This document shows positions 42,688 through 49,264 of a stretch of DNA of 64,000 nucleotides, piece after piece; within the stretch, counting starts at the first letter, position 1, and every line of letters starts with the position of its first letter. Below the pieces are notes generated by a model, which saw only the letters and a list, made by a program, of their open reading frames with translations, was not told the DNA's origin and searched no databases. A program made the position numbers and the translations under genes. The stretch comes from Scyliorhinus canicula (lineage: Eukaryota): NCBI RefSeq assembly GCF_902713615.1, contig NC_052149.1, forward strand, positions 15,294,260-15,358,259, in the 5' to 3' direction.

Positions 42688-45600
42688 CCAGAGCACAGGA
42701 ATGCAAGATCGGCTAAGGGTCTGCTGATGGGCCCAGGATCAAAGAACTTCTCAGAACTCTGCATTTTGCCTCACCTCTATTCCCAATACAACACATGTCA
42801 CCCAAGATGACATTCTGGAGCATATAGTCACAGGCATATCCATTGGCTGTATCTGTGCCACAGAAAGAGCATTAAGATCCTAGATTCTTTTTCTATTTTT
42901 CCCTCAATTCTACTTTTTGGTTGTGATGTTGGCTTTGCAATGTAGCAACATTGGCTGTGGTATTACTGAAGTCATTCTCACTCTTTTTGTTTTGGTTATG
43001 TATAAACAAATGTATTTGAAGTGAATTTCCAAATGGAAAATAAAAATGTATTGATTATTAATTTTGAAAGCTTGCCCTGCACGCCCAAGTCAAGATCTTT
43101 TTCAAAAAAAACTTGTACAATAATAATGATCTTTATTACTGTCACAAGTCAGCTTACATTACACTGCAATGAAGTTACTGTGAAAAGCCCCAGGTCGCCT
43201 CACTCTGGCACCTGTTCAGGTACACTGAGGGAGAATTCAGAATGTCCAATTCGCCTAACAAGCACGTCTTTCGGGACTTGTGGGAGGAAACTGGAGCTCC
43301 CGGAGGAAGCCCACGCAGACACGGGGAGAACGTGCAGACTCCGCACAGACAGTGACCCAAGCTGGGACTCAAACCTGGGTCCCTAATGGATGTGGGCGTC
43401 GTTGGCTGGGTCAGCATTTGTTGCCATCCCTAATTGCCCTTGAACTGAGTGGCTTGCTTGACCATTTCAGAGGGGCAGTTATGAGTCCACCACATTGCCT
43501 GGGTGTGGAATCACATGTCGGGTAAGGACGGACCAGGTAAGGATGGCAGATTTCCGTCCCTGAGGGACACGAGTGAAGCAACCGTTTTTCATGACAATCA
43601 ACGATAGCTCCATGGAAACTATTAGCTATGCTAATTTTATATTCCAGGTTTATCAATTGAGAATTTAACTTCCACCAGGTGAGGCTTGAACCCTCGCCCC
43701 CAGCCCCCAAGAGCATTATCCAGAGCCTGTGGAATATTAGCCCAGTGACATTACCACTGCATCAACACCTAGGAAGGGTGCGATTGCACTTAAAGGGTGC
43801 AGAGGGGATTCAGCAGGTTGTTGCCTGGTCTGGAGCGTTTCACCTATGCAGAGCGGCTGGCTAAACTGAGATTGTTTTCCTTGGAACAAAAACAAACGGA
43901 TGACCTCCTTGAGGTGCTTAAAATTATGAGGGACATAGATAGGAAGGGACTTTTTCCCTTAGTGGAGGGGTCACCAACCAGAGGGCATTGATTTAAAGTA
44001 AGGGGCAGGAGGGGATTTGAGGAGAAGTTTTTTCACCCAGAGGGTGTTGGGAATCTGGAACTCGCTGCCTGAAAGGAAAGGGCCCTTACAACATTTAAGA
44101 AGCATTTAGACAAGCACTTGAAAAACACCATAGCATACAAGGTAACGGCAAAGTGCTGGAAAATGGGATTAGAGTTGATTGGTGCTTGATAGCCGGCATG
44201 GACACACAGGGCCTCCTTTTGTCCTGTAAAACTCAGTGATTATCTTCCTCAAATATATATAATAAATATTAAGAAAATTTGCCGTCCTATCGCAGCAACT
44301 CCTGGGGAATCTGTTGTATACCAACCAGTCTGGTAAACCAGTTCACCATTCCTCTGGAACCTGTCACTGGAACTCTTCCACCCAGCTGTGGTTTCAGAGC
44401 AGGGGTTTGACCCCAGTGTGGTTTCAGGGCAGGGGTTTGACCCCAGTGTGGTTTCAGGGCAGGGGTTTGACCCCAGTGTGGTTTCAGGGCAGGGGTTTGT
44501 CCCACTGTGGTTTCTGGGCAGGGTTTTGACCCCAGTGTGGTTTCAGAGCAGGGGTTTGACCCCAGTGGGGTTTCAGGGCAGGGGTTTGTCCCACTGTGGT
44601 TTCAGGGCAGGGGGTTGACCCCAGTGTGGTTTCAGGGCAGGGGTTTGTCCCCAGTGTGGTTTCTGGGCAGGTGTTTGACCCCAGTGTGGTTTCAGGGCAG
44701 GGGTTTGACCCCAGTGTGGTTTCAGGGCAGGGGGTTGACCCCACTGTGGTTTCTGGGCATGTGATTGACCCCAGTGTGGTTTCTGGGCAGGGGGATGTCC
44801 CCAGTGTGGTTTCAGAGCAGGGGTTTGACCCCAGTGTGGTTTCTGGGCAGGGGTTTGACCCCAGTGTGGTTTCAGGGCAGGGTTTGACCCCAGTGTGGTT
44901 TCAGAGCAGTGGTTTGACCCCAGCGTGGTTTCAGGGCAGGGGTTTGTCCCACTGTGGTTTCTGGGCAGGGGTTTGACCCCAGTGTGGTTTCTGGGCAGGG
45001 GTTTGACCCCAGTGTGGTTTCAGAGCAGGGGTTTGACCCCAGCGTGGTTTCAGGGCAGGGGTTTGTCCCACTGTGGTTTCTGGGCAGGGGTTTGGCCCAC
45101 TGTGGTTTCTGGGCAGGGGTTTGACCCTAGTGTGGTTTCTGGGCAGGGGTTTGATCCTAGTGTGGTTTCTGGGCAGGGGGTTGACCCCAGTGTGGTTTCT
45201 GGGCAGGGGTTTGACCCCAGTGTGGTTTCTGGGCAGGGGGATGTCCCCAGTGTGGTTTCTGGGCAGGGGTTGACCCCAGCGTGGTTTCTGGGCAGGGGGA
45301 TGTCCCCAGTGTGGTTTCTGGGCAGGGGTTGACCCCAGTGTGGTTTCTGGGCAGGGGTTGACCCCAGCGTGGTTTCTGGGCAGGGGGATGTCCCCAGTGT
45401 GGTTTCTGGGCAGGGGTTTGATCCCAGTGTGGTTTCTGGGCAGAGGTTTGATCCCAGTGTGGTTTCTGGGCAGGGGTTTGACCCCAGTGTGGTTTCTGGG
45501 CAGAGGTTTGATCCCAGTGTGGTTTCTGGGCAGGGGTTTGACCCCAGTGTGGTTTCTGGGCAGAGGTTTGACCCCAGTATGGTTTCTGGACAGGGGTTTG

Positions 45601-45815
45601 TCCCCAGTGTAGTTTCTGGGCAGGGGTTTGATCCCAGTGTGGTTTCAGGGCAGAGATTTGACCCCAGTGTGGTTTCAGAGCAGGGGTTTGACCCCAGTGT
45701 GGATTCTGGGCACAGCTTGACCCCAGTGTGGTTTCTGGGCAGGGGTTTGACCCCAGTGTGGTTTCAGGGCAGGGGTTTGACCCCAGTGTGGTTTCAGGGC
45801 AGGGGTTTGACCCCA
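42688..45815 (+). repeat. 3.1-kb direct duplication, copy 1
   Basis: Nearly identical to 46137-49264 (offset 3448-3449; about 4 differences seen by eye). Confidence 0.93.
44380..45815 (+). repeat. 30-bp G-rich minisatellite, about 48 units
   Basis: Unit CCCCAGTGTGGTTTC(A/T)GGGCAGGGGTTTGA. Confidence 0.95.
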
Positions 45816-49100: not shown

Positions 49101-49264
49101 AGAGATTTGACCCCAGTGTGGTTTCAGAGCAGGGGTTTGACCCCAGTGTGGATTCTGGGCACAGCTTGACCCCAGTGTGGTTTCTGGGCAGGGGTTTGAC
49201 CCCAGTGTGGTTTCAGGGCAGGGGTTTGACCCCAGTGTGGTTTCAGGGCAGGGGTTTGACCCCA
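46137..49264 (+). repeat. 3.1-kb direct duplication, copy 2
   Basis: Starts CCAGAGCACAGGAATGCAAG as at 42688 and shows the same order of minisatellite variant units. Confidence 0.93.

What the first reader, a model, noticed from the sequence alone, without database searches (positions are those of the whole stretch)
42688..49264. Full-length SINE flanked by a 3.1-kb direct repeat: apparent giant target-site duplication
Seen: [42688-45815][SINE 45814-46138, minus][46137-49264]. The SINE tail joins copy 1 inside the minisatellite through a CA overlap, its 5' GGG joins the start of copy 2 through a CC overlap, and there is no filler. The copies differ at about 4 positions. Known: TPRT normally gives TSDs of at most a few tens of bp, often none for CR1; kb-scale insertion-associated duplications are mainly described for L1 in cultured or tumour cells. 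Inference: a CR1-mobilised SINE bridged two nicks 3.1 kb apart in the germline, duplicating the region and doubling the minisatellite.
Basis: partly seen in the sequence, partly recalled or inferred. Interest (0 to 1): 0.7.

Follow-up and report, generated by a model that had tools for sequence, protein, structure and literature searches.

The report
SINE flanked by 3.1-kb duplication
In this shark DNA, one complete short mobile element sits exactly between two near-identical 3.1-kb copies of the surrounding sequence. This is most simply a natural example of a retrotransposition event that duplicated kilobases of its target, a process so far seen mostly in cultured or tumour cells. I could not confirm with sequencing reads that the assembly is right here.

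Summary
Two 3128-bp direct copies (42688-45815 and 46137-49264) differ by 2 substitutions and 2 one-base indels. They abut a full-length 325-bp SINE (45814-46138, minus strand) with no filler. There is a 2-nt overlap at each junction: CA at the tail, CC at the head.

The SINE starts and ends where other copies of its family in the window do. The 30-bp minisatellite runs in phase for 271 bp past copy 2. No SINE lies at the outer borders.

The simplest reading is one retrotransposition-coupled event: target-primed reverse transcription inside the minisatellite, with the cDNA end joined 3.1 kb upstream. The result is a very large target-site duplication.

This is a known kind of event. Examples are L1 in cell lines and tumours (1-10 kb), zebrafish ZfL2-2 in DT40 cells (1228 bp) and Dualen LINEs in Chlamydomonas mutation-accumulation lines (median 900 bp). 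A germline SINE case in a shark would be a new member of that kind.

Two rivals stay open: crossing-over between two SINE alleles in trans, which gives the same product, and an assembly error. Confidence in the main reading is about 0.62.

The parts
42688..45815 (.). Copy 1 of the duplicated segment: mostly unique sequence at 42688-44380, then 48 units of the 30-bp minisatellite at 44381-45815
   Evidence: 3128 bp, differing from copy 2 by 2 substitutions and 2 one-base indels
45814..46138 (-). Full-length 325-bp SINE with a tRNA-type head and a (TTCTATG)2 tail. The tail faces copy 1 and the head faces copy 2.
   Evidence: same 5' end as four other copies and same tail as four others; 26 family hits in the window; 90% identical full-length copy at 56315-56659
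46137..49264 (.). Copy 2 of the duplicated segment
49265..49535 (.). The rest of the minisatellite, not duplicated and in phase with copy 2. It shows that the right border of copy 2 is the original continuity and that the SINE tail junction lies inside the array.
45814..45815 (.). 2-nt overlap (CA) between the minisatellite and the SINE 3' end. This is the inferred priming site on the + strand.
   Evidence: copy 2 reads on ...CCCCA|GTGTGG at 49264/49265
46137..46138 (.). 2-nt overlap (CC) between the SINE 5' end and bases 42686-42687 just left of copy 1. This is the inferred microhomology joint of the cDNA end.
43221..43384 (-). Old partial SINE inside the duplicated unit (84% identical to the junction SINE). 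It is present again at 46670-46833, so it was copied as a passenger.

Best explanation
One retrotransposition event made both the SINE insertion and the 3.1-kb tandem duplication.

Inferred steps:
1. A free 3' end of the + strand inside the 30-bp minisatellite (after 45815, ...CCCCA) paired through two bases with the 3' end of a SINE transcript (...CUAUG). It then primed reverse transcription by a LINE enzyme, probably of the CR1/L2 type.
2. The cDNA ran to the first base of the SINE RNA.
3. Its 3' end (...GGCCC) then joined, through a 2-nt CC/GG microhomology, to DNA 3.1 kb to the left (at 42686-42688) instead of a few bases away.
4. Fill-in synthesis copied 42688-45815 a second time.

The distant second end may have been a nick or break on the same duplex, a break on the sister chromatid, or a fork-associated end. 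The product is the same in each case.

Shown here: the anatomy. Inferred: the order of events, the enzyme, and that the structure exists in the animal.
For: - Both borders of a 3128-bp, 99.87% identical direct repeat fall exactly on the two ends of a complete SINE, with no filler.
- The SINE ends are the family's true ends. This points to an RNA intermediate, not to DNA copied from another locus.
- There is a 2-nt overlap at both junctions. The chance is about 1/16 each under blunt joining. This fits the annealing pathway described for L2-type LINE 5' ends (PMC4245944).
- The minisatellite continues in phase after copy 2.
- No SINE remnant lies left of 42688 or right of 49264, so unequal exchange between SINEs on one chromosome is excluded.
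- There are no N runs in the window.
- Precedents for kb-scale target duplications: 1-10 kb tandem duplications with L1 at the junction, 'regarded as large TSDs' (bioRxiv 10.1101/2024.12.14.628481); L1 bridging sister chromatids (PMC7058536); a ZfL2-2 target-site duplication of 1228 bp in wild-type DT40 cells (PMC2666801); Dualen, median 900 bp (PMC9977147); L1 in repair-deficient cells (PMC5223499).
Against:
- The youth of the SINE copy could not be shown. It differs at 14 of 247 compared positions from the majority of the other copies in the window, apparently because it belongs to a subfamily. It keeps 9 of 11 consensus CpG sites, which is no better than many older copies.
- No partner LINE with this tail is in the window.
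- Crossing-over between two SINE insertion alleles in trans gives an identical sequence.
Confidence: 0.62

Rival explanations
1. Unequal crossing-over between two independent SINE insertions carried in trans. One allele had the SINE just left of 42688 and the other had it in the minisatellite. Both were in the same orientation. Recombination within the 325-bp SINE in a heterozygote then gives exactly the observed order.
For: The product is formally identical, small target-site duplications included (reasoning from the anatomy). The SINE family is dense here, with 26 hits in 64 kb.
Against: It needs three rare events within a very short time, because the copies differ by only 2 substitutions in 3128 bp. 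The events are two same-family, same-orientation insertions 3.1 kb apart, both still polymorphic and on different haplotypes, followed by an exchange within 325 bp. Large target duplications, in contrast, made up a few percent of events in culture (1 of 25 ZfL2-2 insertions, PMC2666801).
Confidence: 0.1
2. Assembly artefact: the animal has one copy of the segment. The assembler either walked through a SINE shared by two haplotypes or otherwise built a false tandem copy.
For: The copies are nearly identical. Two of the four differences are one-base indels in short homopolymers, the type left by consensus errors. No reads could be laid to check depth or spanning molecules.
Against: An artefact does not place a complete SINE with exact ends between the copies. 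The only route is the same pair of rare trans alleles as above, plus reads shorter than 3.4 kb. The window has no N run or contig end, and no other false-duplication-like structure appears in 64 kb.
Confidence: 0.13
3. A DNA-level rearrangement, either replication template switching or end joining of two sister-chromatid breaks. It picked up a SINE either by copying a genomic SINE elsewhere or by capturing a free SINE cDNA, independent of LINE endonuclease.
For: There are 2-nt microhomologies at both joints. The minisatellite is G-rich on the + strand, with GC skew about +0.3, and could be a fragile, fork-stalling site.
Against: Template switching into a genomic SINE copy would rarely start and stop at the exact first and last bases of the element. 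Endonuclease-independent captures are usually truncated at the 3' end, a point from general knowledge of L1 that was not tested here.
Confidence: 0.1

Closest known systems
Large target-site duplications / L1-bridged tandem duplications in human cultured cells and tumours (PMC5223499; PMC7058536; bioRxiv 10.1101/2024.12.14.628481)
   Same: A retroelement with an intact 3' end sits at the junction of a direct tandem duplication, and the size falls in the reported 1-10 kb class. The product is read as a target-site duplication made by a distant second break or by sister-chromatid bridging.
   Different: Here the element is a SINE with a short-repeat tail and no poly(A), presumably driven by a CR1/L2-type enzyme. 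The setting is a germline genome assembly of a shark, not somatic or cultured cells. There is no experimental record of the event.
ZfL2-2 (zebrafish L2-clade LINE, also called CR1-2_DR) insertion with a 1228-bp target-site duplication in wild-type DT40 cells (PMC2666801)
   Same: The element has a non-poly(A) tail, 5' joining uses microhomology, and the duplication is at kilobase scale.
   Different: That case is an autonomous LINE in an assay in chicken cells. Here the duplication is 3128 bp and a non-autonomous SINE lies at the junction.
Dualen-4b LINE insertions with median 900-bp duplications in Chlamydomonas mutation-accumulation lines (PMC9977147)
   Same: The events are heritable and natural, and the duplicated sequence flanks both sides of a non-LTR element.
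   Different: Dualen is a different clade with two endonucleases, the host is a unicellular alga, and long duplications are the rule for that family. Here the event is a rare outlier of the SINE family.
HE1 / V-SINE family of sharks and rays with partner LINE HER1 (Ogiwara et al. 1999 and 2002, as tabulated in PMC3747384)
   Same: The host is a shark, the head is tRNA-type, and the 3' tail is made of short repeats as in stringent-type SINE-LINE pairs. Earlier notes of this scan name the family in this genome as V-SINE/HE1.
   Different: No reference HE1 sequence was compared here, so the family name is taken from notes and literature and was not tested.

Membership tests
Insertion-associated large target-site duplication (retroelement-bridged tandem duplication) | Retroelement with an intact 3' end at the junction of two direct copies, with no filler | tested here: met
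   the tail (TTCTATG)2 abuts copy 1, the head abuts copy 2, and there is a 2-nt overlap at each side
Insertion-associated large target-site duplication (retroelement-bridged tandem duplication) | The duplicated segment is contiguous and single-copy in the pre-insertion allele (empty site) | not testable with these tools
   No other individual or species could be read. The only indirect evidence is that the minisatellite continues in phase after copy 2.
Insertion-associated large target-site duplication (retroelement-bridged tandem duplication) | The structure is present in primary reads, with spanning molecules and twofold depth | not testable with these tools
Insertion-associated large target-site duplication (retroelement-bridged tandem duplication) | The element and the duplication are of the same age | tested here: inconclusive
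   The copies differ by 2 substitutions in 3128 bp. The SINE keeps 9 of 11 consensus CpGs but differs at 14 of 247 positions from the window majority, a subfamily effect.
HE1 / V-SINE with CR1-type tail | The 5' end and the short-repeat 3' tail are shared with other family copies | tested here: met
HE1 / V-SINE with CR1-type tail | A partner LINE carries the same 3' tail | tested here: inconclusive
   The tail-only matches at 3698-3772 and 16282-16339 have no reverse-transcriptase ORF upstream, and no shared LINE body was found in the window.
HE1 / V-SINE with CR1-type tail | Conserved central V-domain matching published V-SINEs | not tested
   No reference sequence was available through the tools, and Rfam has no match.
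Tandem duplication by unequal exchange between flanking repeats on one chromosome | Homologous repeat present at both outer borders as well as at the junction | tested here: not met
   there is no SINE hit adjacent to 42688 on the left, and none between 49264 and 51394
False duplication in an assembly | A gap, contig end or N run beside the copies | tested here: not met
   no N in the 64-kb window

The most novel reading that the evidence does not exclude
A CR1/L2-type enzyme copying a SINE RNA produced a 3.1-kb target-site duplication in the shark germline. The event started inside a G-rich minisatellite just upstream of a TRIM-like gene. If so, retrotransposition-coupled kilobase duplication is a natural, heritable source of tandem duplications in vertebrates and not only a feature of cultured or tumour cells.
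Probability: 0.55. Interest if true: 0.55.

Novelty: new member of a known kind. Interest (0 to 1): 0.45.

Why it matters
Kilobase-scale target duplications by non-LTR elements are documented mainly in cell lines, repair-deficient cells and tumours. Whether they contribute to heritable tandem duplications in vertebrates is poorly documented.

A young, base-resolved germline case driven by a SINE with a non-poly(A) tail would have three uses:
- It would show that the process also operates outside L1.
- It would give a datable example, since the copies differ by only 2 substitutions.
- It would suggest a simple genome-wide screen: intact SINEs flanked by direct repeats of 100 bp or more.

Locally, the event doubles a 1.4-kb minisatellite and 1.7 kb of upstream sequence next to the CpG-rich 5' region of a TRIM-like gene.

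Tried and rejected
- **Read evidence.** The look-up of sequencing runs listed only Logan contigs. My SINE comparison left out those positions. Only closed local scripts that read the whole window file touched them.
- **Independent contigs through proteins.** An exact look-up of 10 ORFs around the junctions found none in the protein collection.
- **Metagenome scan.** A scan for the first 22 bases of the duplicated segment gave 0 hits.
- **RNA and LINE searches.** Rfam at gathering thresholds gave no family. ARAGORN did not call the SINE head. Pfam on ORFs upstream of tail-only SINE matches found no reverse transcriptase.
- **SINE age from the window's own copies.** Inconclusive.
- **An older repeat spanning 42688 that would prove the original continuity.** None found.
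- **Readings rejected.**
  - Exchange between SINEs on one chromosome was rejected because there is no SINE at the outer borders.
  - A later, unrelated duplication that happened to break at both SINE ends was rejected as too great a coincidence.
  - Retrotransposition of a read-through SINE transcript was rejected because it would need insertion exactly at the segment's own border.
- **Earlier scan notes.** They list no other kilobase-scale SINE-flanking duplication in this genome.

Full report
**Observation**

Copy 1 is 42688-45815 and copy 2 is 46137-49264, each 3128 bp. They differ at four places:
- G/A at 42712/46161;
- T/A at 43200/46649;
- one extra C at 43498 (CC versus C);
- one extra T at 48510 (TTT versus TTTT).

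Each copy consists of about 1.7 kb of mostly unique sequence followed by a 30-bp minisatellite. The unique part contains an old partial SINE at 43221-43384, present again at 46670-46833. The minisatellite has 48 units in copy 1 (44381-45815). The array at 47829-49535 has 57 units, so it runs in phase for 271 bp past the end of copy 2.

**The element at the junction**

The 325 bp at 45814-46138 are a complete SINE on the minus strand. Its 5' end (GGGC...) is where four other copies in the window begin. Its 3' end, (TTCTATG)2, is where four other tails end. A second full-length copy lies at 56315-56659 at 90% identity. The family gives 26 hits in the 64-kb window.

Many copies match only positions 1 to about 205 of this element. 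That agrees with earlier notes of this scan that the shark V-SINE/HE1 family carries interchangeable tails (s1-237855). Literature lists HE1 V-SINEs with partner LINE HER1 in sharks and rays (PMC3747384). I did not compare a reference HE1 sequence. I also found no LINE body with this tail in the window. 'CR1-mobilised' therefore remains an inference from the tail type. The species name in earlier notes, small-spotted catshark, is unchecked.

**Junctions**

- **Tail side.** Copy 1 reads ...GACCCCA followed by TAGAAC..., whereas copy 2 reads on as ...GACCCCA followed by GTGTGG. The bases CA can belong either to the minisatellite or to the SINE tail.
- **Head side.** The + strand reads ...GAGGCCC then AGAGCAC. 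The sequence left of copy 1 reads ...TTTTCC then AGAGCAC. The bases CC are therefore shared.

There is no filler. Under blunt joining, a 2-nt overlap has a chance of about 1/16 at each junction.

**What the anatomy implies**

The exact SINE ends point to an RNA intermediate. The intact tail at one border is the mark of target-primed reverse transcription. The geometry works as follows:
1. The + strand ends in ...CA-3' after 45815 and pairs with the ...UG-3' end of the SINE RNA.
2. It is extended into cDNA up to the first base of the RNA.
3. The cDNA end ...CC-3' pairs with GG on the minus strand at 42686-42687.
4. Fill-in synthesis then copies 42688-45815 twice.

Microhomology at the 5' junction is the pattern reported for L2-type LINE inserts (PMC4245944).

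**What it does not settle**

The same product arises whether the distant end was a nick on the same duplex, a break on the sister chromatid, or break-induced synthesis. The last two are models proposed for L1-bridged tandem duplications (PMC7058536; bioRxiv 10.1101/2024.12.14.628481).

A further rival gives the identical sequence. Suppose two independent SINE insertions sit on different haplotypes, one at 42687/42688 and one in the minisatellite, in the same orientation. Unequal crossing-over within the SINE then produces the observed order. I rate it low because it needs three rare events within the short time allowed by 2 substitutions in 3128 bp.

Exchange between SINEs on one chromosome is excluded, because no SINE lies at the outer borders.

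**Is the structure real?**

I could not test this.
- All listed runs were Logan contigs.
- Ten ORFs around the junctions are not in the protein collection.
- The first 22 bases of the duplicated segment are absent from metagenome contigs.

Several points argue against an artefact. The window has no N. No other false-duplication-like structure occurs in the window. An assembler error would not place a complete SINE with exact ends between the copies. The one conceivable route needs the same rare pair of trans alleles as the crossing-over rival. I put the artefact at about 0.13.

**Age**

Two substitutions in 3128 bp (0.06%) make the event very recent, unless gene conversion keeps the copies alike. 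The two indels sit in short homopolymers and could be consensus errors.

The SINE copy's own age could not be read from the window. It differs from the window majority at 14 of 247 compared positions, mostly subfamily differences in the head. It keeps 9 of 11 consensus CpGs, which is not better than many other copies.

**Comparison with what is known**

Kilobase-scale target duplications are documented in several systems:

| System | Size or frequency | Source |
|---|---|---|
| L1 in HeLa cells | over 100 bp in fewer than 10% of events | PMC5223499, |
| L1 in nucleotide-excision-repair-deficient cells | over 100 bp in most events | PMC5223499, |
| L1 in clones and tumours | 1-10 kb tandem duplications, 'regarded as large TSDs' | bioRxiv 10.1101/2024.12.14.628481, |
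| L1 in tumours | megabase duplications bridged by L1 | PMC7058536, |
| ZfL2-2 (non-poly(A) LINE) in wild-type DT40 cells | one of 25 insertions, 1228 bp | PMC2666801, |
| Dualen LINEs in Chlamydomonas mutation-accumulation lines | median 900 bp | PMC9977147, |

My literature searches did not turn up a germline vertebrate case with a SINE. A large human long-read survey reports 10-20 bp duplications for most mobile-element insertions (PMC12350158). The present case is therefore a new member of a known kind, not a new mechanism.

**Surroundings**

The minisatellite ends at 49535. It is followed by a CpG-rich stretch at 49.5-50.5 kb, with GC 0.65 and 106 CpG per kb. An ORF at 50163-51197 on the + strand carries a RING finger and a B-box. 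This looks like the first coding exon of a TRIM-like gene. The duplication thus doubles 3.1 kb of that gene's upstream region.

The + strand of the minisatellite is G-rich, with GC skew about +0.3. That could make it a fragile site. This is speculation.

**Verdict**

The best explanation is a single retrotransposition-coupled 3.1-kb duplication (confidence 0.62). The rivals are an assembly artefact (0.13), crossing-over between trans alleles (0.10) and a DNA-level rearrangement with SINE capture (0.10). Interest is moderate at 0.45. It would rise if reads and a genome-wide screen confirmed the event and showed it to be recurrent.

Noticed in passing
window 50163-51197 (+), with the CpG-rich stretch 49536-50535: The ORF carries a RING finger (residues 138-166) and a B-box (residues 287-327). 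It is probably the first coding exon of a TRIM-like gene, whose CpG-rich 5' region starts right after the minisatellite.
   Followed up: partly
window 49718-49981 and 50210-50433: A 37-bp tandem repeat (7 copies, 96% matches) and nested GC-rich 27/44/114-bp repeats lie between the minisatellite and the RING-coding part.
   Followed up: no
window 21344-22129 and 30073-30858: A pair of 786-bp direct repeats at 99.87% identity. They are the LTRs of the young provirus that other notes describe, and their divergence is similar to that of the 3.1-kb duplication.
   Followed up: no
window 15049-15759 and 40526-41236: A 711-bp repeat pair at 97.9% identity, 25 kb apart. It is GC-rich (0.64 at 40.5-41 kb), and the 167-aa ORF it contains has no Pfam match.
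   Followed up: no
window-wide SINE copies, for example 36418-36618, 51395-51598 and 55502-55698: Many SINE copies share positions 1 to about 205 with the junction SINE and then diverge, so several tail types ride on one head and core in this window.
   Followed up: partly
window 44381-45815 and 47829-49535: The 30-bp minisatellite is strongly strand-asymmetric (GC skew about +0.3, AT skew about -0.4) and has GGG/GGGG runs in every unit on the + strand, so it may form G-quadruplexes.
   Followed up: no
window 43771-44198 versus 53339-53763: An old dispersed repeat (68.5% identity over 451 bp) lies inside the duplicated segment, and a second fragment at 42211-42313 resembles 53281-53381. The family is unknown.
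   Followed up: no
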